Made by a program: the position numbers and the translations under genes. From Octopus sinensis (lineage: Eukaryota), in assembly GCF_006345805.1 (NCBI RefSeq), contig NC_043006.1:23002001-23066000 (forward strand): a stretch of DNA of 64,000 nt, in the 5' to 3' direction. This document shows, piece after piece, positions 9,507-63,844 of the stretch (the first letter of the stretch is position 1; each line of letters starts with the position of its first letter). The notes beneath the pieces are model-generated. The model did not search any database, was not told where the DNA came from, and saw nothing but the letters and a program-made list of their open reading frames with translations.

Positions 9507-9525
9507 AAAAAAAAAAGCAAGCATA

Positions 9526-27377: not shown

Positions 27378-27994
27378 ATTCCTGGCAATAGCAGCCATGA
27401 CATAATTGAGAGAGAGAGAGAGAGAGAGATAGTTAATTTAACGGGACAGCAAATGTTGATAACAGTAAATAGAATTTAAGAATCTGAGAGCCAGTCTAAG
27501 CCAAAATTGGAGACGAAATGTCTGTGTGATGGACTTTCATGAGTGAGGGAATATGTTGCAGATTTAGGGGAAATGCATAAGAGTCCCTAATTGTTTTTGC
27601 CTGCTCTTCTTTACAACGTTAGGGTTGTAAAGCAAAAAAAATGGAGTGAAAAGGAAAGAGGAAAAAGGGGTTAAGTGATTGGCATAAGGAAGAACATCCA
27701 GCTGTAGAAACCATGCTAAAGAAAACACAAGGGCATGATGCACTGTCTTGGACATATCAAATCCTGTCAGGCAGCAGTCTAATGACTGAAACAGATAAAA
27801 GATCTTTTAAAAAGTAGATAAAAAGTGAATCCAATGACCCTGTATTCAATGAGGTGATGGTACTAATAACTGTTTCTAACATAGGCACAAGACCAGAAAT
27901 TTTGGGGGAGGTTTCAATTCATTACATCGACCCCCAGTACTGGGTTGGTACTTTATTTTATTAACCCTTGGAAGGATGAAAGGATGTTAAATGG

Positions 27995-34375: not shown

Positions 34376-35847
34376 GAAGGTGGTATCAAAAAGTTCCCGG
34401 AGTAGTTCTGTAGCACGCAAACAGATGGCACAGCACGATTATGTGCATAGTGAGAGATAGCAGTGACCTTGGTGAGGCAGTGTGCCGAGTGACATACTTG
34501 TGTATACTTCGCAAGTCGTGCTTTTGTGATCACGTGCATGCTGTAGTCTGCGATTTTTGTCACGGAGAGGAAGTTCGAACAAAGAGCCGACGTGAAACTT
34601 TGTATTAAACTTGGGAAGTTTGCCATAGAAATATTGAGCATGAAGGCGGCGTGCTGGCAGAAACGTTAGCACGCCGGCGAAATTTCAGCTTAGCGGTATT
34701 TCGTCTGCCGCTGCGTTCTGAGTTCAAATTCCGCCGAGGTCGACTTTGCCTTTCATCCTTTCGGGGTCGATAAATTAAGTGCCAGTTACGCACTGGGGTC
34801 GATGTAATCCGTTTGTCTGTCCTTGTTTGTCCCTTCTGTGTTTAGCCCCTTGTGGGTAGTAAAGAAATAGGTATTTCGTCTGCCGTTACGTTCTGAGTTC
34901 AATTCCGCCGAGGTCGACTTTGCCTTTCATCCTTTCGGGGTCAATAAATTAAGTACCAGTTACGCACTGGGGTCGATATAATCGACTTAATCCGTTTGTT
35001 GTTGTTCGTCCCCTCTGTGTTTAGCCCCTTGGTATTTCGTCTGCCGCTACGTTCTGAGTTCAAATTCCGCCGAGGTCGACTTTGCCTTTCATCCTTTCGG
35101 GGTCGATAAATTAAGTACCAGTTACGCATTAGGGCCGATGTAATCGATTTTATCCCTTTGTCTGTCCTTGTTTGTCCCTTCTATGTTTAGCCCATTGTGG
35201 GTAATAAAGAAATAAGAAATATTGATCATGCTTCGGTAAGTTTACGGCAACGAGGCAATGGGTTGTAGACAATGTTTCGAGTGGCACGGCGCTTCAAAAG
35301 CGGAAGAATGCCCCTCGAAGACGATGACTGATGTGGAAGACCTTCCACGAGCGTCACCCCCAGAAATATGGCATTGTCCATCAAGAATTCGTCCCCCACG
35401 GCCAAACCATCAATTTAAAGTTCTACTGCGATGTGTCGAAGCGTATGAGGGAGGACATTTGGCGAAGGCGACCGGATCTGTGGAACGCGAATTGGATTCT
35501 TCACCGAGCTCGCCTCACTCGTGAGTTTCTCACCAAAAACAACATGATATCGCTTCAGCATCTGCCCTATTCGCCAGATTTAGTACCTGCAGACTTCCAT
35601 CTCTTCCCCAAGATGAAAATGCAGCTCAAAAGTCGCCGTTTTAACAACCGTGGTCGAGATCCAGAACGAATCGCAGCAGGTCCTCAACTCGCTTATGGAA
35701 AACAACTTCCAGCCCAAAAGCGGCAGGAACCCCAAGACCGGTGTATTGCTGCGCAAGGTGACTATTTCGGACAGGATGTTAAACTTGGGTAATTAATTTA
35801 GTTTTCATTAAACATAACTAGTCCGGGAAGTTTGTGATGCAACCTCG
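34376..35847 (+). mobile_element. mariner relic, internally deleted, interrupted by SINE B trimer
   Basis: TA-flanked TIRs; remnants VKLCIKLGK and LQHLPYSPDLVPADFHLFPKMK. Confidence 0.85.
34643..35215 (+). mobile_element. SINE family B trimer (one head, three bodies) with 15-bp TSD
   Basis: TSD GAAATATTGA(G/T)CATG at 34628-34642 and 35216-35230. Confidence 0.9.
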
Positions 35848-36244
35848 TAAATGTAAAAAAGCAGTAATAAGCAGAATCGGTTGAGTTATGTCCCTTTATG
35901 TTGACGTTGAATGAGAGTGTCACTGGAAATTCTTCGCAATATTCCTCATTGAAATTGAAAAGTTCTATGAATTTAAGCTCTTCTAAGAACGCTTTTAATT
36001 TTGTTATAGAACATTCTATAATGATGTTGGGGATCATTCCTGGATCCCTTAATTTTGATTACTGCATCGATTCCATATTTTCCATCTAACATATAAAATA
36101 TTGAAAAAAACCATCGAGTTTATTTTCGAGCACAGTGCTAGTGTTATTCATTTCCTCTTTACAATATATTATGTCATGTCTTTTAGTTTGAAGGATGTTA
36201 AATAAGACATCAACGAAAGAAAAAAATTTCATATTTACAAAGTC

Positions 36245-36510
36245 CTTTGATGCCGGCAGTTTGTTCCATGCTTCAGCAACTCTCAGTGTGAAAAAATGCT
36301 TCCTAAAGTCATGGGAGCTGTGCTGTTTTCTGACTTTGTAAATATGTCCACGGGTGTTAGACGGGTGGAGTTTGAAAAGGTGCTCAGAGTTATTGTTTGT
36401 AAGATGGTTAATAATTTTATGGGTGTCTGCCAAGTCAGCTGCCAGACGTCGGAGTTTCAATGTGTCCATGCCCAGGGAAGTAAGGCGTTCAGAATATGGC
36501 AAATGCTCTT
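36245..36510 (-). mobile_element. CR1-clade LINE C-terminal fragment
   Basis: PYSERLTSLGMDTLKLRRLAADL...TRGH.YK...RKHFFTLRVAEAWNKLP, the typical CR1 ORF2 end. Confidence 0.88.
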
Positions 36511-39517: not shown

Positions 39518-40601
39518 CAGTGGTTCTAAACCAGGGTCCAGATGGCCCTTGGGGTCCCATATAAGATTTTGTGGTTCTTTTCGGTTTGACTGACAGTTTT
39601 TTCTAGCGGTGTCATATGAAATTGTCACCCATAATTATGACCATAGTATCGATCTATTGCATTTCAATCTGTTTTAGGGTTAGAGTTAGGGTTAGGGGTG
39701 GGGGGAACGGGTATCTTTTTTTCTTCAGAAATGTAAATAAACCCAATCTGTTTCTTAAACGAGAGACATTCATACGGCACAGAATGTTTTCACCTCAATA
39801 GACGTCATTGATTGGTTGAAATTGCAGAAATTGAAGAAAAACAACAACAAATATCTTACAAACTATAGAATTTTCTCAATAAAGCCAAGAAAAAAAGATG
39901 TTTTATAAACACATTCTACCAGTATACAAAGTTTAAAAGTGTTTAGTTACGTGGAAATTATTTTAAAAAACTGCCGGTCAAACTGAAAAGATCTGATTTT
40001 GTTGCTAAAATTTATGTGCAATAAATTGCTCATACTTCTACAATACACTAAATACTTTAATTTTTTTTATAGAGTTCCTGATAATATTTATTTGTAAATA
40101 TCGTTAGCATGCCAGGCAAAATGCTTAGCAGTATTTCGTCTGCTGTTACATTCTGAGTTCAAATTCCGCTGAGGTCGACTTTGCCTTTCATCCTTTCAGG
40201 GTCGATTAAATAAGTACCAGTTACGCAGTGGAGTCAATGTAATTGACTTAATCCATTTGTCTGTCCCAGTTTGTCCCCTCTGTGTGTAGCCCCTTGTGGG
40301 CAGTAAAGAAATCGGTATTTCGTTTGCCACTGCGTTCTGAGTTCAAATTCCGCCGAGGTCGACTTTGCCTTTCATCCTTTCGGGGTCAATTAAATAAGTA
40401 CCAGTTACGCACTGGGGTCAATGTAATCGACTTAATCCGTTTGTCCCCTTTATGTTTAGCCACTTGTGGGCAATAAAGAAATAAATATTTATTTGTAAAA
40501 ATACTATAGGATATTTTATGTACATTGAATGGCTCTAGAGATCCAGTTGAACAAAATATGAACCAAAGAGGTCTATAGACAAAAACGGTTGAGAACTACT
40601 G
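39518..40601. mobile_element. hAT (Charlie-type) MITE with nested Merlin-like MITE (39573-39994) and SINE B dimer (~40101-40483)
   Basis: Ends CAGTGGTTCTAAACC / GGTTGAGAACTACTG, TSD CTCAACAG/CTCTACAG; nested MITE TSD GATTTTGT. Confidence 0.82.
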
Positions 40602-43423: not shown

Positions 43424-44604
43424 ATGTAGAGAAAAACAGTAAAGTTTTCATACTCGAAGGCTTTTGATCATACCACTAACTCATTGACCCTACTTACTGT
43501 ACTACCTTGACACTGATCAGGCATTCTGTTGATCTTAAAACTTATTTTTGCCAGCAGAGTGGACTCATGGTAATAAAGCATTTTGCCAAGGCTGGTATTA
43601 GAACTCTCTAATGAAGCTACTTGCCCATATATGTTGTACATGTTTAATTGCTTGGATGGCAAACTTCTGGTTACATTCTCCATCACATTATGTGTCTCTC
43701 TGCAGCTACAACACCCTCAATATAGCCAGTTCCCAGGACTTTTAATGTCCCAGGCTCTTCTTTTTCAGAGGGAGTGCTGACCAATTTGTTAGGCAAGTGG
43801 ACAGAAACTCATTTTGGTTAAGGGACGTTGCTCCACTTTACCCAACTTCCTTTACACATTATCTCAACAACAATAATAACAGTACTTTTTACTACTGGTG
43901 CAAGGCCTGAAGTTTGTTGGGATGTAACTAGACGATTACATCGACCTCCGTCTTCGACTGGTACTCATCGACCCCGAAAGGATGAAAGCCAAAGTCGACC
44001 TCGGTGGAATTTGAACTCAGAAAACAGCGACGGACGAAATACAGATAAACATTTTGTCCGACGTGCTAACGATTCTTATTTCTTTATTGCCCACAAGGGG
44101 CTAAACATAGAGGGGACAAACAAGGACAGACAAAGGGATTAAGTCGATTACATCATCGACTCCACTGCGTAACTGGTACTTAAATTATCGACCCCGAAAA
44201 GATGAAAGGCAAAGTCGACCTCGGCGGAATTTGAACTCAGAACGTAACGGCAGACGAAATACCGCTAAGCATTTCGCCCGGCGTGCTAGAAAGAGAACAG
44301 AATGTAAACAAAGTCACGTGTGTACTTATACCGAAGGATCGCCATATATATGAGTGTGCAAATATATGCAAAAATACGGGATGGTCACGACTGGAACACG
44401 TTATCATAAATCTATATATCACGGCTGATTTGACGCTAAACGTCAATGTCAAGTACTCTATTATCGCCAACTTCCAAAGATATATTAAACAGAGCAGCAG
44501 ACAACTAATAACACAGAAAATTCTCTAAAGTCTTAAAATGCAAGTCTTAAGGAAGAGTGATCAATTAGGATTATAATAAATAGTATAAAAGGTGGGGTCT
44601 AGAC

Positions 44605-45329: not shown

Positions 45330-47600
45330 GAATGTGTTTATAAAACATCTTTTTCTCTTGGCTTTATTGAAAAACGTCCCCCTTGTTTGGATCCTTTCTC
45401 AGCAAAACCACCACCCCTCGACAAACAAAAGCAGGAATTCTCCCGTTTTTTTTTTTTTTTTTTGCCAGTTGCAGTAGACGTTTGCCAAACAGTCCCGCAA
45501 ACAAATCTGGTATTGAAGTGTAAAGCTCGTAGGGCAGACCATCCAAACCTGGCGATCTGCCTCTCGGGCAGCTCTTCATTGCTTCCTCCACTTCCCAGGC
45601 AAATATCGGTCTTTCGCAGCACTCCGCCTCGCCATCCGAGAGTTGCGGTAGGCCGTCCAGGTACACACCGAAGTCTGTCCCTTTGTCCGTCCCACCGTTC
45701 ACCCCAAACAGTTGACCAAAGTGCCGCTGAAACACCGCACACATCTGCTTCGGTTCGGAAACCTCGAGCCCGTTCTGGTCCACCAAAGACCGAACGGTCG
45801 CTTTGTTGCTACGCTTCGCCTTCACCACGCGAGCCCATCGAGCGGCTTTAGTTCCCTCCCCGCTTAGCGAACGCGCCTTAGCTCTGACAACGCAGCCTTC
45901 GTGTTTGGCGTCAAAGCGATGGTTGAGGGTCAACCTAGCCGCCAACATCGGTTGCGATGCCTGTCTCAAGAGCCTCGTCTAGTTTTCTAACTAAATCCCG
46001 CTCTGTTTTCTAACTAAATCCCGCTCTGTTTTCTAACTAAATCCCGCTCTGTTTTCCTAGGTTCTACAGCTAGAGCTTTACTAAACCTAATCGACTCTGC
46101 TCTAATTGCTCTCTTGAGAGCAAACCACCAGTTGTTGATGATTGCCCCCGTGAGCGCTCGTTTAACAAATAAACTAATCCGGTCTCTGTAGGCTTTGCAC
46201 GCCGTTAACGACGCGTTCAGCTTCCAGTAGCCAGGATCCTGTCTATGTAGCCTATCTAAGTCGACCGTACAGATCACGAATTTGTGGTCCGTGTAGTCGA
46301 CTAGGTGGAATTGTGGACACTCTATGCTGTCCTTATCCGCTGGCCTACAGAAGACTCTATCTAAGTACGATCTTGACGACCCGATGCAATTAGTCCAAGT
46401 CCACATTGGCACATTCGGGTTGTCTAGTCGAAACCTGTCGGACAGCTGAAAGCGCCTGAGCAGGTTGGCGAGGCTCTTGCACCCCCTCTCCTATTAGATG
46501 CTCCCGTGCCCACCCGATCGAAACGTTCGTCTAAGACAGCGTTCCAATCCCCAACTAGCACTAGAGTGCGTGACGTTCCCAAGAAAACTTCCAGACGCTT
46601 GAAATAATCGGACTGCCCTGCTCCTGTCGGAGCGTAGGCAGCCAGCAGTCTGAAAGCACCACCGTCACTACCGTCTCCGTCGAGGACCACTAACTTACCT
46701 TCCGGATCCAGGAAGACTGTCCTTATTTTCAAATCCAGGCCCTTCCGAAACAAAACCGCAGTACCACCACCGCCCGCTCCCGGCCGACACGGAGATAGAA
46801 AGATCTCGTATCCGCCGAAAAGGGCCGCGAGTTCCTGCGGGTCGGAGAGCCTGGTTTCACTAATGGCTGCCACATCCACTCTATGAGACCTCAGGTCGTT
46901 TAACAGGTGACCCTGTTTCCAAGGTGACCCGAGGCTTCTTACCGATTCTGAGTTTTTCCATGTTTTAAAAGGTTAAGGAGAAAAAGGCTCTACTTACTGT
47001 TGTTGTTTGGTGGGATGGCTCCCTTGTGCTTTTGCGCGGGTGTTTCCACCAGGTTTTTGTAGAGTTTTTTTGAGAAATTTCTCTCTAGCGACCCAACATC
47101 GTTTGGGAATTTCTCCTTGATTTTATTATAATTGTCTTGTGTGATTTTAAATGTAAGTATGTGTGATGGTGGTGTGTTGTGCGTGGGTATAATAAAATCT
47201 GACAGTTTTGTGTCTGTGATGTTTTTCAGGTATGTTACTATCTGTTCATTGCTCGTGTTTATTGCTGTAACGGTGTTGGTGGTGTCTGTGTGTGTTGGTG
47301 TGTGTAGTAGTACTGGTGGAGAAGGTGGTGTTAATTGTTGTTGTTGTGAGTGCATGTTGTTACTGTTGATGTTAGGAAGCTCTAATTGTTCGCGCCTCCC
47401 CAGTGTGTCATGTGTTTCTTTTTGTTTCTTTCTTCTTTTCTTTTTCGGTGGCACTGTGTGCCACTCCCCTTTCTCGCTATCAGTGCTCGCACAATCCGAG
47501 CTGATTTGGTCTGGAAAGGGGACATTTGTTGGGTCTGTTTCCACAGTTTATACAGTGCTCAGGTGCACCACAACTTGTCAAAAGTGCGTATAAAGCATAT
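45330..47600 (-). mobile_element. Tx1/L1-clade LINE, 3'-truncated, frameshifted
   Basis: ORF1-like 47544-46990; ORF2 ATG ~46961; APE motifs (DVAAISETR, GDWNAV, PGYWKLNASL); SPGLDGLPYELY; stops before the RT core. A 23-bp unit x3 at 45982-46050 shifts the frame. Confidence 0.88.
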
Positions 47601-47602
47601 GC

Positions 47603-47810
47603 AGTAATGTACATATGTCTGGAAAGCGAACAGTGTATGAGTCAGATACATGCTAGCGTGTGTATGGAGGGGAGAAAATCAGGAGTAGTGTTGGCGAATC
47701 TCAGAAAGCATGAAAGTTTTGAAGGATGCAGTACTCCGACAACTAACAACTGATGCCAGCAGTTTGTTCCATACTTCAGCAACTCTTAGCGTGAAAAATG
47801 TTCTATACAA
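47603..47810 (-). mobile_element. CR1 LINE 3' end
   Basis: FTLRVAEVWNKLLASVVSCRSTASFKTF...; overlaps in sequence with the 36245 fragment. Confidence 0.75.
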
Positions 47811-50800
47811 TCTATATAGGCCCATACTCGGCCTATATAATCTATATTGGCACCCATGGGTATAAATAGCTTATATAGTCTCCCAAGTAGACTTTAGGAA
47901 CACCTGGGCCTATATTGCAACTTCTGCACCTGTATATGATTTTAATGAAAATTTTGAAAAAATGTTTCAAAGGAATTTCATGAACCTTTTGAAAAACATT
48001 TCAATGGAATTTGATGAAAATTTTCAAAACTTTCCAAAGTGCTCCATGAAAAGTCTGAAAAAATTTTCAGAAGAGTTTGATGAAAACTTTGATAAAACTT
48101 TTCATTGTTTCACGAAACTTTTTTCAAAAATTTCATCAAATTCTTTTGAAAAGTTTTTCAAATTTTCATCAAATTCCTTAAAAATGTTTTTTAAAATTTT
48201 CATCAAATTCCTTTGAAAGATTTCTCAAAATTTTCACAAAACACCTCTAAAAGTTTTTCAAAATTTTATCATATTCCTCAGAAAAGCTTTTCAAAATTTT
48301 CCTCCAATTCCTTTGAAATTCCTTTCAAACTTTTCACGAAAATCCTCTGAAAGTTTTAAAAAAATTTTCTTCAAATCTATGTAGGGACAGGAGGGGGGCT
48401 GTATAGTCTATATAGGGCCTTGGTCCAATATAGTGTATAGAGGCAACCTTGGACTATATACACTATAGTCCGCCTGGCCTATACACATCATATAGGCCCT
48501 AAGCCTATATACGCTATATAGACCACTGGGTCTATATAATGTATATAGGGACAAGGCCCTGTATAGTCTAGGTTCCTGGTCCAATATACACTATAGGACC
48601 CCTGGGCCTGTATTAATTATATAGGCACCAAAGTCTATATACACTATATAGGCCTGGGCATATATAATGTATATAGAGACAGGTTTCTGTATATTCTATA
48701 CAGGTATGCAGTGACTGTATGCATTATAGACCCCCTGGGCCTGCATATATTTTATAGGCCTCTGGGCCTATATACAGTATATAGGCCACTTGGCCTTTAG
48801 AGACTATATAGGGACAAGTGCCTGTATAGTGCAGGCCCATGGGCCAATATACACTGTATAGGCCTCCGGGCTTATAAACACTATATAGTGTATATTAGCC
48901 CGGAGTTTCTATATAGCCTCTGAAAAGTTTTTCAAATTTTCATCAGATTCCTTAAAAATGTTTTTTTAAAATGTTCATCGAATTCCTTTGAATGGTTTTT
49001 CAAAATTTTCATCAAACTCCTTTGAATAGTTTGTCAAAATTTTCAACATAATCCTCTAAAAGTTTTTCAAAATTTTTTATCATATTCAATAGAAAACGTT
49101 TTCAGAATTTTCACCAAAATCCTCTAAGTTTTCAAAATTTTCATGAAATCTATGTAGGGACAGGAGGGCTGTATAGTCTATATAGGTCCTCTGCTCCAAT
49201 ATAGCGTATAGAGGCACCCTGTGCCTATATACATTATATAGGTCCCTAGGCCTATATACGCTATATAGGCCTCTGGTCCTATATAGTGTATATATGGACA
49301 AGGGCCTGTATAGTCTAAGTTCCCTGGTCCAATATACACTATTGGCGCCCTGGGCCTGTATTCATTATATTATTCATTATATGCCTATATAGTGTATATA
49401 TATATATACACTATATATAGGACATGGGCATATATAATGTATATAGAGACAGGTGTCTGTATAGTCTATATAGGCATGCAGTGCCTGTATGCACTATAGA
49501 CCTCCTTGGCCTATATACATTATATAGGCCTCTGGGTCTATATACAGTATATGGGCATCTGGGCATATAGAGAGTATATTGTGCCAAGTGCCTGTATAGT
49601 GCAGGCCTCCTGGTCCACTATACACTATAAGCTCCCTGGGCCTGTATACATTATATAGGCCCCTCAGTTTATATACACTATATAGGCCCATACGTCTATA
49701 TACACTGTATAGAACTCTGGGCCTATACAGTGTATACACTATGTAGTGTATAGTGAGATAGGCGGAGATAGAGTAAGATAGGCGGAGATTGGCGGACATT
49801 GGCGGAGAGTGGCGCAGATAGGTGGAGATAGGCGGAGATAGACGGAGATGAGCGGAGATTGGCGGAGATTGGCGGAATAGCATTTTGGGAGATTTCCCAA
49901 TAATGCTGGGTGTTAAAACACCTGGGAGAGAGGGAGAGTGTGAGTATCTCGGCCTATCTCCGCGTATCTCCGCCAATCTCCACTAATCTCCGCCAATCTC
50001 CACCAATCTCCGCCTATCTCATTCTATCTCACTCTATCTCCGCCTATCTCCCTCTATCTCACTCTATCTCCGCCTATCTCACTCTATCTAACTGGTACTT
50101 ATTTAATCGACCCTGAAAGGATGAAAGGCAAAGTCGACCTCGGCGGAATTTGAACTCAGAACGTAACGGCAGATGAAATACGGCTACGCATTTCGCCCGG
50201 CGCACTAACGTTTCTGCCAGCTCGCCGCCTGCGAGATTTTCCAATAATGCTGCGTGTTAAAACACCTGGGAGAGATTGCAGGAGATAACCGGAGATTGCC
50301 GAAGATTGCCGTAGATTACCAGAGATTGCCGGAGATTGCCGAAGAAAGCCGAAGATAGCCAGAGATTGCCGGAGATGTTGCCGGAGATTGCTGGAGATAA
50401 GTGAAGATTTCCGGAGTTTACCGGAGATGGCCGAGATGGCCGAGGATGGCCGAGATTGCCGGAGATAGGCAGAGATAGGCGTAGATAGGCGGAATAGCAT
50501 TATGGGAGATTTCCCAATAATGCTGGGTGTTAAAACACCTGGAAGAGAGTGAGATAGAGTGAGATATGCGGAGATAGGCGGAGATAGAGTGAGAGAGAGA
50601 GTCAGATATGTGGAGATAGGCGGAAGTAGGCCGAGCTAGACGGAATAGCATTTTGGGAGATTTTCTAATAATGCTGGGTGTTAAAACAACCGGGATAGAT
50701 TGCAGGAGATAGCCGGAGATTGCCAGAGATTGCCGTAGATTGCCGAAGATTGCCGGAGATAGCCGGGGATAGCCGGAGATTACCGGAGATAGCCAGAGAT

Positions 50801-53800
50801 TGCCGGAGATAGCCGGGGATAGCCGGAGATTACCGGAGATAGCCAGAGATTGCCGGAGATTGCCGGAGATAGCAAGAGATGGCCGGTGATAGGCAGAATG
50901 GCATTTTGGGAGATTTCCCAATAATGCTGGGTGTTAAAACGCCTGGGAGAGAGTGAGATAGAGTGAGAATGCCGGAGATAGGCGGAATAGCATTTTGGGA
51001 GATTTTCCAATAATGCTGGGTGTCAAAACACCTGGGAGAGAGTGCGTCTATGAAAATAATTTAGAGGATTTTGTGAAAATTTTGAAACACTTTTAGAGTA
51101 TTTTAATAAAAATTTTGAAAAACTTTTAGAGGATTTAGGTGAAAATTTTGACAACCTCTTCAACGTACAGTTGGGGCACGAAATAGCCTAAAATGGACCA
51201 GTTGGCGTATATATATTTGCAATTTTTCATCATATGAAATTTTTCATCATATGAAAAACTTTTTCAGAAATTTCCAGTAAATCAATTGAAAATACTTTGA
51301 AAATTTTCATCCGAATCCTATAGAGGTGCAGAAGTTGCAATATAGGCCCATTTTTTTTCACAGGCTATATAGGCACACTCAATATGGGACCTGGTGGACC
51401 TATATAGGCTATACAGGAACCCTGCGCTAGTATACAATATATAGTGTATATAAGCCCAGAGGCCAACACAGTGTATTTAGGCCCATGGGCCTATATAGTG
51501 CATAGTGGAACAGGGGGCCTGTACTATAAAGGCACTTGTCCTTATATACACTATATAGGCCCAGAGGCCTACATACTGTATATAGGCCCAGAGACCTATA
51601 TAATGTATAGAGGCCCATGGGGCCTATAGTGCATAGAGGCACTGCATGCTTATATAGATTATGCAGAACCCTGTCCCGATACACACTTTTAGAGAATTTT
51701 GATAAAAATTTTGAAAAACCTTTAGAGGATTTAGGTGAAAATTTTGACAACCTCTTCAAAGGAACTTCAGGAAAATTTTGAAAAACTTTACAAAGGAATT
51801 TGATGAAAATTTTGAAAAACATTTTTAAGGAATTTGATGAAAACTTTGAAGAACATTTCAAAGGAATTTGATAAAGATTTTGAAAAACTTTTCAAAGGAA
51901 TTCAATGAAAATATCAAAAGAAATTTTGTGAAATAATGAAAAGTTCTCTCAAAATTTTCATCAAACTCTTCTGAAAATTTTTTCTGAATTTCATGGAACA
52001 CTTTGGAAAGTTTTGAAAATTTTCATCAAATTCCATTGAAATGTTTTTTTTTAATTTTCATCAAATTCCTTTGAAAAGTTTTTCAAAATATTCATCAAAA
52101 TCATATAAAGGTGCAGAAGTTGCAATATAGGCCCAGGTGTTCCTAGATCCCGCTTAGGAGACTATATAAGCTATTTATACCCATGGGTGCCAATATAGAC
52201 GATATAGGCCGAGTAGGGGCCTATATAGATGTTATAGGACCCTTGGCCTATATAGGTTATATAGTACCGGGGGGGGGGGCGAAATAGCCTAAATAGGGCC
52301 CGTGGGCCCTATATTTTTGCAATTTTTCATCATATTCCTTTGAAAAGTTATTCAGAAATTTCAAGTAAATCAATTGAAAATATTTTGAAAATTTTCATCC
52401 AAATCCTATACAGGTGCAGAAATTGCAATATAGGCCCAGTTTTATTTTCAGAGGCTCAGTCAATATAGGCCATGGTGGGCCTATATAGATTATACAGGCA
52501 CTGCGGGCTAAAATACACTATATAGTGTATATAGCCCCACAGGCCTATATAGTGTATAGGAGGCCCAATGGGCCTATATAGTGTATATAGAATCAGGGAC
52601 CTATTTAATGTATACACGCCAAGGGGGTCTGCACTATACAGGCACTTGTCCCTATATACACTATATAGGCACAGGGTCCTATGTACTGTATATAGTGCCA
52701 GAGACCCATATAATGTATATAGGTCCAGGGGGCCTATAGTGCATACAGGCCCTGGATGCCTATAGAGACTATACAGGCCCTAGTCCCTATATACACTATC
52801 TAGGCCCATGGGCCTATATAGACTCAGGGGCCTATATATTGAATACAGGCCCAGGGGATACCAATAGTGTATATTGGACCCGGGGTCATAGACTATCAAA
52901 GCCCTTGTCCCTATATACACTATAAATATCAAGGGGCCTACATAATGTATATAGCCACAGGGGGCCTAAATTATATATAAGCACATGTTGCCTATATACA
53001 CTATATTGGAGCAGATGTATGTATAGACTATACCGGCCCCTGACCCTATATACACTATATAGGCCCGAGTGCCTACATAGTGTTATAGGTACGGGAGCCT
53101 ATACCAGGTTCCTATATTCACTATATTTGACCAAGTGGTCTATATAGTTGTATACAGCCCCCTGTCCCTATATACATTTGATGAAATTTTAAAAAATCTT
53201 TTAGAGGATTTTGGTGAAGATTTTGACAAACTATTCAAAGGAATTTGAGGAAAATTTTGAAAACGTTTTCTAAGGAAAATGATGGAAATTTTGAAAAACT
53301 TTTATTAGAGGATTTTGGTGAAAATTTGAAAAAACTTTTCGAAGGAATTTGATTAAAACTTTGAAGAAGTTTCCAAAGAAGTTTCCAAAGAAGTTTCCTA
53401 TAAAAATTTTGAAAATCTTTTAGACGATTTTGTTGAAAATTTTGACAAACTTTTCGAAGAAATTTGAGGGAAATTTTGAAAAACTCTAAGAGGATTTTGG
53501 TGAAAATTTTGACAATCCTTTGAAAGGAATGTGAGGAAAATTTTGAAAACGTTTCTAAGGAATATGATGAAAATTTTGAAAAACTTTTAGAGGAAAGTTT
53601 TAAAAAACATTTCAAAGGTATTTGATGAAAATAAATTTTTAGAGGATTTTGGTGAACATTTTGAAAATCTTTTCATAGGAATTTGATGAAAATTTTTAAA
53701 AACACATCTAAGGAATTTGAAAAACATTTTTTGAAAAAGTTTTCAAAGGAGTTTCATGAAAATTTTGAAAAGCTTTTAGAGGATTTTGGCGAAAATTTTG

Positions 53801-55790
53801 CAAAACTTTTAGAGGATTGTGATGAATATTTTGAAAAACATTTAGAGTATTTTGGTGAAAATTTCGACAAACTTTTCAAAGGAGTTCAATGAAAATTTTG
53901 AAAAAAATTTCGCGAAACACTGAAAAGCTTTATCAAACTTTTCGTTAAACTGTTCTGAAATTATTTTCAGAATTTGCATGGAACACTTTGGAAAGTTTTG
54001 AAATTTTCATCAAATTCCATTGAAATATTTTTCAAAATTTTCATAAAATTCTTTTGAAAACATTTTCAAAATATTCATCAAAATCCTATACAGGTGCAAA
54101 TGTTGGAATATAAGCCCATGTATTCCTAGAATCTGCTTAGGGACTATATAAGCTATTTTTACCCATGGGTGCCAATATTGACTATATAGGCCGAGTAGGG
54201 GCCTATATAGATTGTATAGGACCCTGGGCCTATAAAGGTTATATAGTACCGGGTGGGAGGGGGTTCTAAATAGCCTAAAACGGGCACGTGGGAGAATATA
54301 TTTTTGCAATTTTTCATCATATTCCTTTGAAAAGTTTTTCAGAAATTTCAAGGAAATCAATTGAAAGTTATTTTGAAAATTTTCATCCAAACTCGATGCA
54401 GGTGCAATATAGGCCCAATTTTTTTTAGAAGCTTGTATAGGTTCAGCCATTGTAGATCCTGGTGGGCCTTTATAGGCTATACAGCCACACTGGGCAAATA
54501 CACAAAATCCTATACAGGTGCAGAAATTGCAATATAAGCCCAGGTATTCCTAGAGTCTGCTTAGGAGACTATATAAGCTATTTATACGCATGGGTACCAA
54601 TATAGACCATATAGGCCGAGTAGGGGCCTATATAGATTGCATAGGATCCTAGGCCTATATAGGTTATATAATCCCGCGAGGGGGTCTAAACAGCCTAAAT
54701 AGACCCCGGGGACCTATATATTTCTGCAATTTTTCATCAAATGCCTCTGAAAAGGTTTTCAGTAATTTCAAGGAATTCAATTGAAAATATTTTGAAAAAT
54801 TTCAGCCCAGTTTTTTTAGAGGCAATATAGGCCCTGGTGGGCCTATATAAGCTATACAGACACCATTGACACTATATAGAGTATATAGGCCCAGAGGCCT
54901 ATATAGTGTATATAGGCCTATGGGCGTATATATTGTATATACACTCAGCGACCTATTTAATGTATACACGCCTAGGGGGCTTATAGTGTATAGTGGACCA
55001 AGAGGCCTGCACTATACAGGCACTTGTCCCTATATACACTATATGATCCCAAGGCGTATACATACTGTATATAGGCTCAGAGACCTATATAATGTATATA
55101 GGCCCAGTAGGCCTATATTGCATACAGGCCCTGGATGCTTATATAGACTATTGGATTCTCCCTAAATACACTACATTGGCCCATGTGCTATATGGTGTAT
55201 ATAGTCTCAGAGTCCTATATAATGTATACAGGCCCAAGGTGGCCAATAGTGTAGACTATCCAGGCCCTTTTCCCTATATACACTAAATTGGCCCAGGCGC
55301 CTATATAGTGTATATATTCCTAGGAGCCTATATAATGTATATAGGCACAGGTTTCCTATATGCACTATATTGGAGCAGGGGCGTATATGGACTATTAGGC
55401 CCCCCTGACCATATATAAACATTATAGGCCCAGTGGCCTACATAGTGTATATAGGCCGAGAAGTTGCAATATAGGGCCTGTTTTTTTTTCAGAGGCTATA
55501 CAGGCTCAGTCAATATAGGCCCTTGTGGGCTTATATGGGCTATACAGGCACTGTGTATATAGGCCCAGAGGCCTATATAGTGTATATAGGTCAATGAGCC
55601 TACATGGACCTCTTTAATGTATACACGCCTAGGGGGCTTATAGTGTATAGTGGATCTGGGGACCAGCACTATACAGGCACTTGTCCCTATATACACTATA
55701 TAGGTCCAGGAGCCTATGGTGCATGCAGGCCCTGGATGACTATATAGACTATACAGACCCCTGTCACTAAATACACTATATTGTCTACAA
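47811..55790. repeat. Composite satellite: AT-tract blocks, TATA/GGCC blocks and GC-rich decamer core; arms inverted about the core
   Basis: Marker GGTGCAGAA(G/A)TTGCAATATAGGCCC forward at 51325, 52110 and 52413 (variants at 54093, 54517) and reversed at 47906-47930; ~1980-bp higher-order period; 33-bp A-block unit; 10-bp core units. Confidence 0.9.
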
Positions 55791-55834
55791 AGTATATAAA
55801 AGTCTATTGTCTACAAAGTATACAATGTAGAGAA

Positions 55835-56160
55835 AAAAAGATTTGAACACCTGGAGGAAAGCACCATTGAAAAGTGTCTTGGTGCGACTACGAAAGATAT
55901 CTAACCAGAGGCGGTAAATTCGCCACAATAGAAGCAATGTTCGAGTCAACGGAGCGTGCAAGGGAGTACTCGACTCGAACCTTGCAAAGTGGAAATATTT
56001 TATTTTTACCTTTATATCTGGGATGTAGGACGTCCCGGATAAAAATTTAAAATGTCTCCCCAGAAGTAGAGGTAGGCTGGATTGTAGCCACACTTCTATA
56101 TAAGAGGGAGGATAAGATGCAATTGATCGAAATTGCAAGAGATGGGCTTACAATTCCAGT
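55835..56160 (+). mobile_element. Possible Tx1/L1-type ORF1 fragment
   Basis: Frameshifted reading FEHLEESTIEKCLGATTKD.LTRGGKFATIEAMFESTERAREYSTRTL...LPLYLGCRTSRIKI*NVSPEVEVGWIVATL looks like a LINE ORF1 RRM-type region (recognition only). Confidence 0.4.
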
Positions 56161-56379
56161 CTGTTATATATTTTGAGTATTGTTATCACTAGCGATATCA
56201 AGATATAACTTTGTATTTTGCATTTTATGTGTAGATGTATATATATAGATGTACATGTAATATGTACACATATATATACACATATATACATGCACTAGCT
56301 CTATGACCCGGCAACGACGGATCATAATGCTAGTATATTATATATATATTATATTATATATTATATTATATATATATAT

Positions 56380-56457: not shown

Positions 56458-57690
56458 CAGGGATTGGAAAAAATGGAAACACTTCAACATTTCTAACAAA
56501 TGAAATTTGATATGGGGTAGGGCCGATTTTGGCAGTAATCACATCTTGAATTCTACAAGGTATGGACTCGTACAAAGTTTGAATAATTTCAAAAGGAATT
56601 TTTGTCCATTCTTCAGCTAAAACAATCTCCAGTTCTTGTAGTGATGATGGTGGAGGGTATCGACTCCTTACTTGTTTTCTAAAATGCACCATAAATGTTC
56701 AATAATATTGAGATCTGGGGACTGTGATGGCCAGATAAGATGTTCAAATTCACTAGAATGTTCCTTGTGCCATTCAGTAACAACTTTAGCTGTGTGAATT
56801 AGTGCATTATGATCCTGAAAGATTGCGTTTCCCTCCAGAAACAATTCTGCAACCATAGGATGAATTTGATCAGATAAAATGCTTAAATCGTCTTGACTAT
56901 TAATTCTGCCATGAAGAGAAACCATTGGGCCAGTGGATTTCCAAGATATAGCCTCCAGATCATCACAGATTCTCCTCCATGTTTAACAGTTGGAAGAAGG
57001 CAGTCTGGGTGAAATGCTTCTTTAGGTTATATCCACTGGTACACTCGGCCGGTGGCCGGAAATAAGGTAAAAGATGACTCTCCGAGAAAATAACCTTCTT
57101 CCACTGCTCTAGGGACCAATTCTGTAGGTTTTTACTCCACTCTAAATACTTTACAACGTTTGTTTTTGAAGCCCTCCCGTGAAATCCGCCTTTGTGCAGT
57201 TCTCGGTGAACAGCTTTGGGTTTTCGAGGTGGTCATGAGGCTCTGCAGTAATTTTAGGAGCTGTACTTTTGTGATCCTCTCTAACAATTTGCATAAGAGT
57301 TCGACGGTTCCTATCTGTAAGTTTTGGGGTTTTTTCCGGAATTTTGTTTCTACGAGGAGATTTTTCCCTCTTTCTCAAAGGGCGTCATTACTTTCGAAAC
57401 AGTACTTCTAGATACACCAAATATTTCGGCTGTTTTCGTTACGCTAGCGCCTGCCATCCGAGCACCAACAATTTGACCTCTTTGAAAGTCCGATAGATCT
57501 GTCATTTTAATGAATTTTGATTACCCTTTTCTGATGATATCTGAAAAGAAACAGCAATTTTGGTAAAGCATGTTAAGCAACACTAATAATAAATGAAAAA
57601 ACAAAAATATACAAGCTTTTGATGGTTTTATAGATATTTCAAAATTGTGATGCTATGATGCTAGGTGTTTCCATTCTTTTATCCAACCCC

Positions 57691-57692
<2 letters not shown>
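56458..57692 (-). mobile_element. Tc1-like transposon relic
   Basis: TIRs CAGGGATTGGAAAAAATGGAAACAC / inverse; IFQDHNALIH, WPSQSPDLNIIEHLW motifs; frameshifts. Confidence 0.9.
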
Positions 57693-58320: not shown

Positions 58321-58796
58321 CACCTGCACAGAGTTTCTGATGCGTTGAATTCACGACAAAATTACCATAGATAGTCGGGGCTCGGTTCATCTTAAGCTGC
58401 TGTCAGCGATAGATTTATTTCAGTATTGATTATTGGTTGCTAAAATATCTGCAGTGAAGAAGCTGGTATATCAGCAATTTGGTTATGTGTATTTTGGACT
58501 CTCCTGTCATTAAATGATGGCTGATGGTTCTGCAATTTCTAACTGAACAATTGCACAAATGCCTTGTTTATGGTAGTCAAATGTTTATGATGCGCATAAG
58601 CTCCCTCCCTCCATCAAATTGACATTGCCTGTACAAGTTTCAAGACTGTGCCACGCATCAGAAGTCGAAATGGTCGCAGAACAACGGAAGATGAAATAGT
58701 TTACTCAAGAACGCCACTCGCCGCCCGGTCTGGGATCGAAACTATGATGTTGCTATCGTGAGTGCAACACCTTAACCACTAGGCCATATGTACATA

Positions 58797-59250
58797 TATA
58801 CAGACTGATACATACATACATACATACATACACACATACATACATACATACATACATACATACATACATACATACATACACACACATACATACATACATG
58901 CATGCATACATACATACATCATACATACATACATACATACATACATACATACATACATACATACATACATACATACATCATACATACATACATACATGCA
59001 TGCATGCATGCATGCATACATACATACATACACACACACACATACATACATACATACATACATACATACATACATACATACATACATACATACATACATA
59101 CATACACCCGTACATACATATATACATACATGCATACATACATACACACACACACACATACATACATACATACACACACATAAACACACACATACATGCA
59201 TACATACATACATACATACATACATACATACATACATACATACATACACA
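58797..59250. repeat. (TACA)n microsatellite
   Basis: Direct inspection. Confidence 0.95.
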
Positions 59251-60762
59251 TCTGCATATTTAATGTCGGTATGCAAGTTACTGCGGTTATTGTCCGAGAT
59301 AAAAGTTCTTATGGATGTGCTGTATTATCGAAGGGAGACCAAATGTCGGCCCAGTAGCGATTAGCGAGAGTGTCTGATGAATTTCGACCTCACGTATAAC
59401 TCCTGTATTCATTAATTAATATTTCACTCTCGCTGACAGAATACACCACACTGTTTCTTTAAGTTCTGTTTCTGCTCTACGTATGGGCGTTGCTTTCATA
59501 GACTACACACACCTCTTCACTAACTATATATGGCCTTTTACATATGTTTGTGTTTAAAAAGCAAACCATAACTCCGCCCCACTTTATGCGGAATCACAGT
59601 CCGAACATATGTTGCCTGTTATCGTGGATTTTAAGATATTCTCGTTCGCTTGGTCTTCAAGTCGTGGCCACGCCCACACTTCTTGTAAGATCAGTTGTAT
59701 TTTTCAAGAACTAAGCAGTAAATATGGACACGATAGACCAGAAAATAAACTTCTGGCGTGCCAACAACGTCGGGGTTTCAATCTTAGATCGGGGGCGAAG
59801 GTATGGCTGGTTGTGTGGTCACGAAATTCATTTCGGAAACCACATTGAACCAAGTTCGATCCCATTCATCCAAGTTCGATTCAACATATTGGGTGTTTTC
59901 TAAAGTAACTTCCTGAATGACGAATACCCCGCGAATTTGGTAGACGGAGAATTCGAAACATATATTCGAGCTTGGTTGGTTAGGTTCGTTTGATGAACCT
60001 ACGAAACTTTAAGCTGTATGGAGCAGAATCAAACTGTTAAATAACTCCAACCAAATGTGTTGAGTAACGCTATTTTTCGATAGTCCATGTGTGTGTGTGT
60101 GCGTAGTTTTATTTCTAGATTTCTTGCCAATGGAGAAAGAGCCAGTTTCTGAACTAGATTCAAAGTTTCGTTATTAGAAATTCGACAGCAATATAGGGTA
60201 GTGCATTTATGTGTGCATATGTGCAAATATATGGAGTCAGTACATGTGCAGATCTGTATATTTTTATGTATGTATATTCACACATAGTTGTATGTCTTGA
60301 CATGGGAATTTGCGCTTATATACTAAACTTTTGGACAGTTTTACATATTTCAGTAGTTCTATTGATAGTTTGTATCTGTAGTCTCGTAATCAGTTTTCTC
60401 CTTTCTGATTTGTCAAGATTGGAACTGAAGCTATTTATTTCATACCTAGTGCCCAAATAATTACGACTCTAAATCTAAACTTTTAATCCAGGTGGATTTA
60501 CTGTAAATTTCTTAACAGTTTTGCGCTGTTGCTTTCTTTTATACTGAACTTTAGCTCTATGATTTTTTTTTACTTATTCCCATCAGCGAAAGGCACATAC
60601 ATACCTATACATACATATAGAAATCATACACATACACACATACACACTCACACTCACACACATACACACGCATACACACACCACACACTTATCTACAGAC
60701 ATATATATATATATATACATATAAAAGCACATACATAATACATACATACGTACATACATACT

Positions 60763-62155: not shown

Positions 62156-62719
62156 CTCTACAGGAAGTTTAATATTTTTCTTCATTTTTCTAATACCTAT
62201 TTATTTATTCATTTTATATTGTTTTGCCGGAAGACAAGGCCTTTCGGGGGCTGTGCCCCCAACACACTTTGTAACCGTCTCATTTGCAGTTTCAGTATCA
62301 ACAGCTAAATTTAATTAACTATTTGCCTGCTTGCATCAGGACCTTCTGACACATTAAATTAAGATGGTCGCTTTTCACTCACCGCTATTTTAAAAAAATA
62401 TCGTCCACAACTGACTTTTCTTTTTGTGATTTGTTTGTTTTGTAGGTTTTTTTAACCTCACCTCCCTTTCGGTTTCATTTTAATAGTTTTGTTTGTTGTT
62501 GACTTTGTTGTAATTGTTGTTTTTTTTTGGGGGGGGGGGGTTCTATGTTTAATAACTCTTCTCCTTTCTTTTCCCTCTTTCCTTTCTTTTTCTTCCTATT
62601 ATTCCTTCTTTTCCTTTTCTTTTGGCGTCGTGTTCTTGGCGACTCCGTTTCTTCCAGAAACGTCCTTAACGCTACAATAGTCTCGCTGCACTCCACCACA
62701 CAAACATATGGTCAATTGC

Positions 62720-62767
<48 letters not shown>

Positions 62768-63130
62768 GGTGGTGGTGGTGGCAGTTGTAGTGGTGGTTTT
62801 GGTTGTATTAGTAGTGATGATGGTTACGGTGGTGATAGTAATATAGTAGTAGTAGTGGTGGTGGTGGTGGTAGTGATGTAGTTGTAGTAGTAGTAGTGGT
62901 GGTGATGGTGGTGGTGGTGTGGTGGTGGTGGCAGTTGTAGTGGTGGTTTTGGTTGTATTAGTAGTGATGATGGTTACGGTGGTGATAGTAATATAGTAGT
63001 AGTAGTGGTGGTGGTGGTGGTAGTGATGTAGTTGTAGTAGTAGTAGTGGTGGTGATGGTGGTGGTGGTGGTGGTGGTTGTGGTAGTGGTTGTGGTAGTGA
63101 CATAGAAGTAGTAGTGGCGGTGGTGGTAGT

Positions 63131-63162
<32 letters not shown>

Positions 63163-63171
63163 GGTAGTGAT

Positions 63172-63222
<51 letters not shown>

Positions 63223-63243
63223 ATATAGTAGTAGTAGTAGTAG
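62720..63243. repeat. (GTA)n/(GTG)n trinucleotide array with internal ~126-bp duplication
   Basis: Direct inspection; GGCAGTTGTAGTGGTGGTTTTGGTTGTATTAG occurs twice. Confidence 0.92.
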
Positions 63244-63844
63244 ATCGAGAGGCAAAGTGGCAATAAAAGAGCGACGTCAATGAGGACTACTAAAAACGAT
63301 GATGAAACGACAGCAATGAAGGACAAAGATAACGACGACGACGATGACGGCGATGATGATGATGATGACACGACGACCATGACGACAATGGTGATTATGT
63401 ATGTCAAAATAAAGGGGGAGGGGGGAGGGAAAAACAAAAAAACAAAAGATAAAATACGATGAAAAATGACAAATATAACATAGGAGAATAAATAAATAAA
63501 TAAAGCAAGTGTTGTTGTTGGTGATGATGACGAGGGGAAGGGCAACCCATAATGAGGGTGATGACAGCAATGGCGGGCAAATGTTAGTGATGAAAGGCCA
63601 GTTAGAAATGGTATGGATGATGACAGGGTGGAGGGTAAGTGGTGAATATTGTAATTTTTTTTTTTTTTTGTAGTATGTGGTAGGTTATTCTGGAAATATT
63701 AGAGCGGGGCGGGGGGCGGGGGGATAAGTGGAAAAAGTGGAAAAAGTGAGAAAAGTGATTGAAAATGGTTAGGTCTTTCACATTAAGGACTTCGTAGTGA
63801 TTGTGGGGGTTTTGCGGTAACAAGTTTCCTTAAAGAGGAAATAC

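What the first reader, a model, noticed from the sequence alone, without database searches (positions are those of the whole stretch)
47811..55790. 8-kb composite satellite with inverted arms (foldback-like architecture)
Seen: alternating A-blocks (gaaaattttga-type) and B-blocks (ctatataggcc-type) form a ~1980-bp higher-order unit (52110->54093). The left arm (47811-49745) is the reverse complement of units in the right arm (51050-55790); for example GGCACCCATGGGTATAAATAGCTTATATAGTCTCCC at ~47850 is mirrored at ~52155 and, less exactly, ~54140. Orientation flips at the GC-rich core. Established: modular long inverted repeats built of subrepeats typify foldback elements (Drosophila FB, sea-urchin TU). 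The outer ends are asymmetric and no TSD is visible, so element status is inference. I do not recognise it as a described family.
Basis: partly seen in the sequence, partly recalled or inferred. Interest (0 to 1): 0.7.

Follow-up and report, generated by a model that had tools for sequence, protein, structure and literature searches.

The report
Old composite tandem-repeat locus with inverted arms
An 8-kb stretch of non-coding DNA in an invertebrate genome consists of a few short hairpin-prone repeat units stacked into larger blocks, with one side flipped relative to the other; it is real but old and decaying, is best read as an ordinary complex satellite that underwent an inverted duplication, and has not been shown to be a jumping gene.

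Summary
Window 47800-55790 is a composite tandem-repeat locus. It is built from a 34-bp unit (A), a quasi-palindromic 27-bp unit (B), and two derived blocks (C, which is B-like, and D, which is A-like). These form an irregular ~2-kb higher-order unit.

The left arm (47800-49748) is the reverse complement of the right arm (51046-55790) for every block type. Cross-arm identity is 71-89% inverted against ~60-66% direct.

The GC-rich core (49749-51045) is a third tandem family. It has 10-bp arrays punctuated by six copies of a ~57-bp double-hairpin motif (H), all on the + strand. It also holds one 340-nt near-perfect hairpin and a 5'-truncated SINE.

The inverted copies are as diverged from the right arm as the right-arm copies are from each other. 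The inversion is therefore old and is not an assembly fold-back artefact.

The transposon criteria that could be tested fail or cannot be scored. The left end is a truncated C block abutting LINE-derived sequence, and the right end lies in B. There is no terminal inverted match, no TSD and no coding capacity. No other copy was found in the window or in any searchable collection.

My best reading is a decaying complex satellite with a hairpin-mediated inverted duplication. A foldback-transposon relic remains possible. Interest is low to moderate.

The parts
47800..47942 (-). C block of the left arm, in reverse orientation. It contains the junction motif J at 47906-47931 and is truncated ~30 bp before the normal end of C.
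   Evidence: Alignment with C1, C2 and C3. Identity to the right-arm copies is 85-89%. J is matched with 0 mismatches on the minus strand.
47943..48376 (-). Mirror image of the A+/A- pair. 34-bp units read one way at 47943-48104 and the other way at 48120-48376, forming a local hairpin.
   Evidence: TRF. Inverted pair I18. Folds at -91.7 kcal/mol, z = -8.6. 81-83% identical to the right-arm A+A- segments.
48377..48916 (-). Outer B block of the left arm (27-bp / 54-bp quasi-palindromic units).
   Evidence: TRF. Aligns best to right-arm B blocks on the minus strand, 71-75% against 63-65% on the plus strand.
48917..49149 (-). Inner A block of the left arm (34-bp units, 7 copies).
   Evidence: TRF. 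Together with the next B block it is a direct duplicate of 48147-48888, at 80% over 772 bp.
49150..49748 (-). Inner B block of the left arm, abutting the core.
   Evidence: TRF. Its best match is right-arm B0 on the minus strand, 82%.
49749..50088 (.). Mini-foldback inside the core. A 10-bp array (GGCGGAGATA, + orientation, 49749-49880) is followed by H1 (49877-49941) and then the same 10-bp array inverted (49945-50088).
   Evidence: TRF. Inverted pair I17, 128 nt at 80%. Folds as a 340-nt hairpin, -115 kcal/mol, z = -14.4.
50089..50230 (+). 5'-truncated copy of a SINE-like element. It sits exactly on a strand-switch junction and replaces the 5' part of H2 (the first ~20 nt of the motif as shown by the H alignment). 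No TSD is visible.
   Evidence: More than 20 related copies elsewhere in the window, 72-97% identical. Alignment shows that the other copies extend further 5'. The H alignment shows where H2 is cut.
50231..51045 (+). Rest of the core. It is a tandem series of H motif plus 10-bp arrays (GAGATTGCCG, GAGATAGGCG, GAGTGAGATA): H2 at 50231, H3 at 50494, H4 at 50641, H5 at 50898 and H6 at 50986.
   Evidence: TRF. H alignment. H pattern hits, all on the + strand. H folds into two small hairpins, z = -3.8 to -6.2 for three copies. GC is 50%.
51046..51349 (+). Short A+ stub (33-bp units, 2.8 copies) and block D0, ending in motif J (51324-51349).
   Evidence: TRF, D alignment, J match.
51350..52270 (+). 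First right-arm unit: B0 (51350-51686), A+ (51687-51936), A- (51937-52099) and C1 (52100-52270). This is the segment mirrored by the left arm.
   Evidence: Inverted alignment to 47800-48650, 76% over 858 bp. Among right-arm copies, C1, the adjacent A+A- segment and B0 are each the closest to their left-arm counterparts.
52271..54258 (+). Second higher-order unit: D1, B1 (52438-53175), a long A+ block (53176-53905), A- (53906-54086) and C2.
   Evidence: Direct alignment of 51687-53176 to 53671-55282. TRF.
54259..55790 (+). Rearranged further units: D2, a short B, C3 (54501-54678), D3, B3 (54811-55455), a J-like remnant, and B4 up to the right edge.
   Evidence: Alignments, TRF, B orientation test. 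The right edge carries a 21-bp direct duplication at 55779-55799 and 55805-55825.
47751..47799 (-). Left boundary. A fragment encoding the C-terminal motif of a LINE reverse transcriptase (FFTLRVAEVWNKLLAS) is joined directly to the truncated C block.
   Evidence: 91% DNA identity to 36248-36292. tblastn against the LINE ORF at 36086-36502.

Best explanation
This is a non-coding, non-autonomous complex tandem-repeat (satellite-like) locus. It is not a demonstrable mobile element.

Two short monomers that each contain a palindrome expanded by slippage and unequal exchange: A (34 bp) and B (27 bp, effectively a 54-bp self-complementary dimer). They became interleaved into a ~2-kb higher-order unit of A+, A-, junction motif, C (B-like), D (A-like) and B. 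That unit was then amplified a few times.

An inverted duplication followed, most likely by fold-back priming or template switching at hairpin-forming repeats. The 10-bp-array hairpin in the core is the obvious candidate site. This placed a mirror copy of the first unit on the other side of a core made of 10-bp arrays and H hairpin motifs.

Since then the locus has decayed neutrally, to 70-90% identity between all copies in either orientation. It has suffered block-length changes and internal duplications, and retroelements have invaded it: a SINE in the core and LINE-derived sequence at the left edge.

Shown here: the anatomy, the orientations, the equal divergence of inverted and direct copies, the hairpin potential, the broken left end, and the absence of coding capacity. 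Inferred: the order of events and the fold-back or template-switch mechanism.
For: - Tandem structure and higher-order unit.
- Every block type is inverted between the arms.
- Inverted copies are as diverged as direct ones. C blocks are 85-89% identical across arms and 88-90% within the right arm. A+A- segments are 81-83% in all pairs. B blocks are 71-82% across arms and 66-81% within an arm.
- The left arm is symmetric with the first right-arm unit when read from the centre outward. In each case its closest relative is that first unit: C1 88.7%, J1 83.4%, B0 81.9%.
- Hairpins occur at several scales: H, the 340-nt core hairpin with z = -14, and the A+/A- junction with z = -8.6.
- There are three strand switches, with short palindromic microhomology at one junction (GAG|TATCTC at ~49945).
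- No Pfam domain was found in the five array ORFs scanned; the LINE and Tc1 ORFs in the flanks do hit. Rfam gives no match above threshold and ARAGORN finds no tRNA.
- The ends are not equivalent, and the left end is a TE junction.
- No other copy is present in the window.
Against: - Genome-wide copy number and distribution could not be examined. It is therefore unknown whether this is a single locus, a satellite family or a dispersed element.
- Modular inverted arms of subrepeats around a non-coding middle domain are also the anatomy of foldback transposons such as Tetris (PMC4079207).
- The left arm is truncated, so the key terminal test is lost rather than failed.
- The same 10-bp unit, in a small foldback arrangement, occurs in an unrelated marine metagenome contig (L004). 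L005 carries a long array of the same unit with only weak inverted partial units. This hints that the core module may be dispersed or mobile.
- H (0-3 mismatches in 45 nt across five copies) is better conserved than the surrounding repeats. J is matched with 0-2 mismatches in 26 nt across five copies. Pure neutral decay does not predict this.
Confidence: 0.55

Rival explanations
1. The locus is a relic of a non-autonomous foldback-type DNA transposon, similar to Drosophila FB, sea-urchin TU or D. virilis Tetris. On this reading the two arms are long TIRs built of tandem subrepeats that later expanded. The core is the non-coding middle domain. The left terminus was destroyed by a LINE-associated junction.
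For: - The inverted arms are built of modular subrepeats.
- The middle domain is non-coding and of different composition.
- Unequal arm lengths and variable subrepeat numbers are normal for such elements. Tetris has TIRs of up to 1.7 kb containing 220-bp tandem repeats, and its middle domain has no ORF.
- The core contains an FB-like 10-bp-repeat hairpin.
- The same 10-bp unit in a mini-foldback occurs in an unrelated marine contig (L004).
Against: - The outermost ends are not inverted copies of each other. The right flank has no inverted partner.
- There is no TSD, no transposase, and no second copy in 64 kb.
- The searchable collections yielded no related copy of the arms.
- The arms are no more similar to each other than the tandem units within one arm are.
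- The right arm ends directly in B repeats. It lacks the unique terminal flanking domain seen in Tetris.
Confidence: 0.2
2. The locus is a shuffled cluster derived from rolling-circle (Helitron/Helentron, HINE-type) elements. The H double hairpin next to a microsatellite-like 10-bp array would be the palindrome and microsatellite modules of tandemised truncated elements. The A and B arrays would be their central tandem repeats, as described for complex loci in oyster genomes.
For: - HINEs combine a microsatellite, central satellite-like repeats and a 3' palindrome. In Crassostrea they form truncated, tandemised and oppositely oriented arrays in complex loci.
- The core is a tandem series of a palindrome-bearing H motif plus a microsatellite-like array.
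- H is the best-conserved part of the locus.
Against: - No subterminal inverted-repeat pair was identified, and no Helitron termini or Rep/helicase sequence.
- There is no sequence similarity to anything retrievable.
- The resemblance is purely architectural, and the host taxon is not established.
Confidence: 0.1
3. The inversion is an assembly artefact, produced by a fold-back chimeric long read or a mis-join. The true locus would then be a plain head-to-tail array.
For: Satellite loci are prone to mis-assembly. No read data were available to check this one.
Against: - Fold-back read artefacts give near-identical arms. Here the arms are 71-89% identical, with different block lengths and a private internal duplication.
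- There are three separate strand switches.
- An old, diverged SINE lies at one junction.
- There are no Ns in the window.
Confidence: 0.05

Closest known systems
Complex satellite DNA with higher-order repeats and strand switches
   Same: Short monomers repeated head to tail are stacked into a larger periodic unit. Block lengths vary, and there are inversions within the array. The locus is non-coding, the monomers contain palindromes, and transposable elements have invaded it.
   Different: Only ~8 kb is seen, and abundance in the genome is unknown. Three unrelated monomer families are interleaved. The mirror symmetry is centred on a distinct GC-rich core.
Foldback transposons (Drosophila FB, sea-urchin TU, D. 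virilis Tetris; PMC4079207)
   Same: Long inverted arms are made of tandem subrepeats. The middle domain is non-coding and of variable composition. The arms are unequal. The core hairpin is built of 10-bp repeats, which I recall as resembling the FB TIR subrepeats (from memory, not tested). Tetris shows that such repeats can grow into satellite arrays.
   Different: No matching outer termini, no TSD and no dispersed copies were shown. The arms are as diverged from each other as the tandem units are. The right arm lacks the unique terminal flanking domain present in Tetris.
Helentron/HINE elements carrying satellite-like central repeats, and their shuffled loci in oysters (PMC7492417, PMC12628747)
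   Same: A microsatellite-like array, palindromic hairpin motifs and satellite-like tandem repeats occur together. The units are tandemised, truncated and oppositely oriented within one locus.
   Different: No subTIRs, Helitron termini or Rep/helicase were identified. There is no sequence similarity. The monomers here are 27-34 bp rather than ~160 bp.

Membership tests
Foldback (FB-like) DNA transposon | Long inverted arms composed of tandem subrepeats | tested here: met
   The arms are inverted for A, B and C blocks. Cross-arm identity on the minus strand is 71-89%, against 60-66% on the plus strand.
Foldback (FB-like) DNA transposon | The outermost termini of the two arms are inverted copies of each other (conserved terminal or flanking domain) | tested here: not met
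   The left end is a C block truncated ~30 bp early and joined to a LINE fragment. The right end is the end of a B block. The right flank 55781-56340 has no inverted match in the window. Caveat: the original left terminus may have been lost.
Foldback (FB-like) DNA transposon | Target-site duplication of fixed length flanking the element (8-10 bp in Tetris) | tested here: inconclusive
   No flanking direct repeat is visible. However, the left boundary is a secondary TE junction, so the original flank is not available.
Foldback (FB-like) DNA transposon | Multiple dispersed copies sharing the same ends, or empty sites | not testable with these tools
   No copy is present elsewhere in the 64-kb window. 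The protein-based and exact-pattern searches of public collections found nothing related to the arms. The source genome itself is not searchable here.
Satellite DNA with higher-order repeat | Head-to-tail tandem monomers | tested here: met
   34-bp, 27-bp and 10-bp arrays, each with up to ~20 copies.
Satellite DNA with higher-order repeat | A larger periodic unit containing several monomer blocks in fixed order | tested here: met
   A ~1985-bp unit (51687-53176 against 53671-55282, 70% over 1650 bp), plus partial units and conserved block junctions.
Satellite DNA with higher-order repeat | High genomic abundance or long arrays at many or specific chromosomal sites | not testable with these tools
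   Only this window is available.
Helentron / HINE with central tandem repeats | 5' and 3' subterminal inverted repeats, a left-flank microsatellite and a 3' palindrome flanking the array | tested here: inconclusive
   Palindromic H motifs adjacent to microsatellite-like 10-bp arrays are present. No subTIR pair or defined element ends could be recognised from a single locus.
Fold-back chimeric-read assembly artefact | Nearly identical inverted arms meeting at a single junction | tested here: not met
   The arms are 71-89% identical. There are three strand switches, the arms differ in block lengths, and an old SINE lies at one junction.

The most novel reading that the evidence does not exclude
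The locus may be a decayed copy of a previously undescribed family of foldback-type mobile elements in this (probably molluscan) lineage. The TIRs would be built of composite minisatellites, and the core would carry an FB-like 10-bp-repeat hairpin module that also occurs in other marine eukaryotes (Tara Oceans contigs L004 and L005). On this reading the locus captures a transposon-to-satellite transition like Tetris, but outside insects.
Probability: 0.15. Interest if true: 0.5.

Novelty: new member of a known kind. Interest (0 to 1): 0.25.

Why it matters
As it stands, this is one more example of a complex, hairpin-rich tandem-repeat locus in a repeat-dense invertebrate genome. Its use is mainly for repeat annotation, where A, B, C, D, H and the 10-bp units should be added to the species' repeat library. 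It is also a small case study of how palindromic monomers favour inverted duplications.

It would matter more if genome-wide copies showed that the arms plus core form a mobile unit. That would add a foldback-like family outside the classic insect and echinoderm examples, and give a second documented route from TIR subrepeats to satellite arrays.

Tried and rejected
- **Searches for other copies through predicted proteins.**
  - The D-C-A ORF (54010-54450, minus strand) gave no hit among 5.8 billion proteins.
  - The A/B ORF gave only one borderline low-complexity hit among 1.84 billion representatives.
  - The core ORF hit two Tara Oceans contigs that share only the 10-bp array.
- **Exact-pattern scans.**
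  - The commonest B 20-mer in JGI metagenomes returned one unrelated locus, L001.
  - The H and J motifs gave 0 hits in viral contigs.
  - The SINE core gave 0 hits in prokaryote genomes.
- **Exact-product look-ups.** Two window ORFs were not on record.
- **Organism identification.** The flanking LINE ORF gave one 48%-identical Logan hit with no taxon. The SINEs remind me of octopod repeats, from memory only, so the organism stays unverified.
- **Literature string searches.** The SINE, B and H sequences matched no paper.
- **Rfam at permissive threshold.** Only sub-threshold generic miRNA-hairpin matches appeared, and I reject them as artefacts of the hairpin potential. ARAGORN found no tRNA.
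- **Does the array continue beyond the left LINEs?** No array-like sequence occurs anywhere else in the window.
- **Is the array a LINE 5' or 3' UTR repeat?** Rejected. The only LINE homology at the junction is ~50 bp of RT C-terminus coding sequence, and the array lies upstream of it on that strand.
- **Is apparent inversion of the B blocks just monomer palindromy?** Rejected by the plus/minus comparison.
Full report
**What is there.** The window is eukaryotic, repeat-dense DNA. It contains a LINE endonuclease, Tc1 and mariner remnants, a 5S rRNA gene and many copies of a SINE-like element.

Between about 47800 and 55790 lies a block of sequence found nowhere else in the 64 kb, apart from its embedded SINE copy. 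TRF resolves it into three tandem families:
- A 34-bp unit (A), consensus TTTGATGAAAATTTTGAAAAACTTTTCAAAGGAA.
- A 27-bp unit (B), consensus CTATATAGGCCCAGAGGCCTATATACA. In practice B behaves as a 54-bp self-complementary dimer.
- 10-bp units (GGCGGAGATA, GAGATTGCCG, GAGTGAGATA) in the GC-rich centre.

Two further blocks are derived from these. C (~150 bp) has 27-bp periodicity and is B-like. D (~170 bp) contains degenerate A units. A 26-nt junction motif, J (AGGTGCAGAAGTTGCAATATAGGCCC), marks each transition from an A- block to B-like sequence. It occurs once on the minus strand in the left arm and four times on the plus strand in the right arm, with 0 expected by chance.

**Higher-order structure.** Reading outward from the core, the right arm is:

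A+ stub, D0, B0, A+, A-, C1, D1, B1, A+, A-, C2, D2, short B, C3, D3, B3, J-like remnant, B4.

51687-53176 aligns to 53671-55282 at 70% over 1650 bp. It is one of several unequal spacings, and later units are rearranged. Each full unit contains its own inverted pair, A+ followed by A-, which folds as a long hairpin.

**The inversion.** The left arm (47800-49748) is the reverse complement of right-arm units.
- 47800-48650 aligns to 52240-51438 at 76% over 858 bp, 608 bits.
- 47800-48375 aligns to 54222-53648 at 82%.

B monomers are quasi-palindromic, so I tested them separately. Same-arm B pairs align best on the plus strand, at 66-81%. Cross-arm pairs align best on the minus strand, at 71-82%. 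The wrong orientation gives only ~62-66%. The inversion therefore holds for every block type, and the k-mer dot plot agrees.

Reading outward from the core, the left arm is B, A, [B, A], A, C. This mirrors the first right-arm unit (B0, A+, A-, C1), with one extra internal [A-B] tandem duplication (48921-49658 against 48147-48888, 80%). The left-arm blocks are in each case marginally closest to that first right-arm unit: C1 88.7%, the adjacent A+A- segment 83.4%, and B0 81.9%. The structure is thus symmetric from the centre outward.

**The core.** 49749-51045 is not a unique spacer. It is a third tandem family, in which 10-bp arrays are punctuated by six copies of a ~57-nt motif H. H consists of two small hairpins.

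All H copies are on the plus strand. Only the 10-bp array at 49945-50088 is inverted. Together with the array at 49749-49880 and H1 between them, it forms a 340-nt near-perfect hairpin (-115 kcal/mol, z = -14).

Orientation therefore switches three times: at 49747, at ~49940 and at 50088. It does not switch once in the middle of the core.

A 5'-truncated SINE copy (50089-50230) sits exactly on the third switch. It replaces the 5' part of H2 and shows no TSD. This would fit capture during break repair, but that is inference.

**Age and reality.** Inverted copies are as diverged from the right-arm copies as the right-arm copies are from each other:

| Block | Across arms | Within the right arm |
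|---|---|---|
| C | 85-89% | 88-90% |
| A+A- segment | 81-83% | 81% |
| B | 71-82% | 66-81% |

This excludes a fold-back read artefact, which would give near-identical arms. It also shows that the inversion dates from about the same period as the amplification of the higher-order unit. The diverged SINE in the core points the same way.

**The ends.** On the left, the C block stops ~30 bp before its normal end. It is joined directly to ~50 bp that encode the C-terminal motif of a LINE reverse transcriptase. That fragment is 91% identical to 36248-36292. A second LINE follows, with ORF1 and an APE endonuclease.

On the right, the array stops at the point where a B block would normally pass into A+. 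It is followed by unique DNA that has no inverted partner anywhere in the window. Next comes an independent Tc1 relic at 56458-57692, with its own TIRs and a DDE_3 hit.

The two ends are therefore not equivalent. No TSD can be defined, and the original left end is lost.

**Coding and RNA.** The five array ORFs scanned are translations of the repeats and have no Pfam match. Rfam gives only sub-threshold hairpin noise, and ARAGORN finds no tRNA.

**Copies elsewhere.** The source genome cannot be searched with these tools. Indirect routes gave nothing for the arms.

The core ORF did retrieve two Tara Oceans contigs, L004 and L005. They carry arrays of the same 10-bp unit (GGAGATTGCC). In L004 a 5-unit array faces a 20-unit inverted array across a 70-bp spacer. 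They share nothing else with the window. A shared 10-mer may be coincidence in a database of this size. The repeated mini-foldback anatomy is nonetheless worth noting.

**Interpretation.** The best-supported reading (about 0.55) is a complex satellite-like locus, built from palindrome-containing monomers, that underwent an inverted duplication and has since decayed and been invaded by retroelements.
- Fold-back priming or template switching at hairpin-forming repeats is the most economical mechanism for the duplication.
- It accounts for the centre-outward symmetry, for the multiple strand switches, and for the hairpin sitting next to the switch points.
- The mechanism itself is inferred, not shown.

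The foldback-transposon reading (about 0.2) fits the gross anatomy. Tetris, for comparison, has long TIRs with internal tandem repeats and a non-coding middle domain. This locus fails the terminal-identity test, cannot be tested for TSDs or dispersed copies, and shows no closer similarity between the arms than between tandem units.

A Helentron/HINE-derived shuffled locus, as described in oysters, is an architectural possibility only (about 0.1). An assembly artefact is unlikely (about 0.05).

**Comparison and verdict.** This is a new example of a known kind of sequence, not a new kind. I found no described family with these sequences, but the means to look were limited. The organism is unverified. 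The SINEs resemble octopod repeats as I recall them, and that was not tested.

Interest is low to moderate. It would rise if genome-wide analysis showed that the arms plus core form a discrete, repeated unit with fixed ends.

Noticed in passing
window 9009-9508, 34695-35197 and >20 dispersed sites (e.g. 21686-21827, 31185-31326, 40102-40223, 44170-44288): A SINE-like element is extremely dense in the window, with more than 20 copies in 64 kb. It also forms short tandem arrays: 186 bp x 2.7 copies at 94% matches, and 162 bp x 3 copies. Its sequence reminds me of octopod SINEs, from memory only and not tested.
   Followed up: partly
window 50089-50230: The SINE copy inside the satellite core is 5'-truncated and has no visible TSD. 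It lies exactly on a strand-switch junction, where it replaces the 5' part of an H motif. This fits capture at a repaired break, but that was not shown.
   Followed up: partly
L004 883-1200; L005 762-1054 (Tara Oceans metagenome contigs): Unrelated marine eukaryote contigs carry arrays of the same 10-bp unit (GGAGATTGCC) as the core. In L004 a short array faces a long inverted one across a 70-bp spacer. There is no H motif, and no A or B repeats. This could be chance, or a dispersed foldback-like module.
   Followed up: partly
window 47906-47931 (-), 51324-51349, 52109-52134, 52412-52437, 54516-54541; H motifs 49887-51041: Motif J (26 nt) is perfectly identical in three copies, and H (45 nt) has 0-3 mismatches in five copies. 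The surrounding repeats are only 70-90% identical. This is locally higher conservation with no explanation.
   Followed up: no
window 27263-27381 (-): A full-length 5S rRNA gene, Rfam RF00001, 73.7 bits.
   Followed up: no
window 45340-47590 (-) and 47751-47799 (-): A LINE with an ORF1-like ORF and an APE endonuclease (PF03372). Its reverse transcriptase stops after the first motifs. It is preceded by a ~50-bp fragment of another LINE's RT C-terminus, related to 36086-36502.
   Followed up: partly
window 56458-57692 (-): A degenerate Tc1-like transposon with TIRs CAGGGATTGGAAAA / CAGGGGTTGGATAAAA, embedded in (TA)n. It has frameshifted transposase pieces with a DDE_3 hit.
   Followed up: partly
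window 12225-12671 (-), 35331-35792 (+): Mariner-like transposase fragments. The second has a sub-threshold Pfam Transposase_1 match (22.1 bits against a cut-off of 24); the first was identified by eye from its translation and had no Pfam hit.
   Followed up: no
window 14388-14779; 22899-23178; 17442-17988; 58779-59276; 62672-63545: Other tandem or low-complexity arrays: a 99-bp repeat at 98% matches, a 63-bp repeat, and long imperfect (ACACATATAG)-type and similar microsatellite tracts that generate spurious long ORFs.
   Followed up: no
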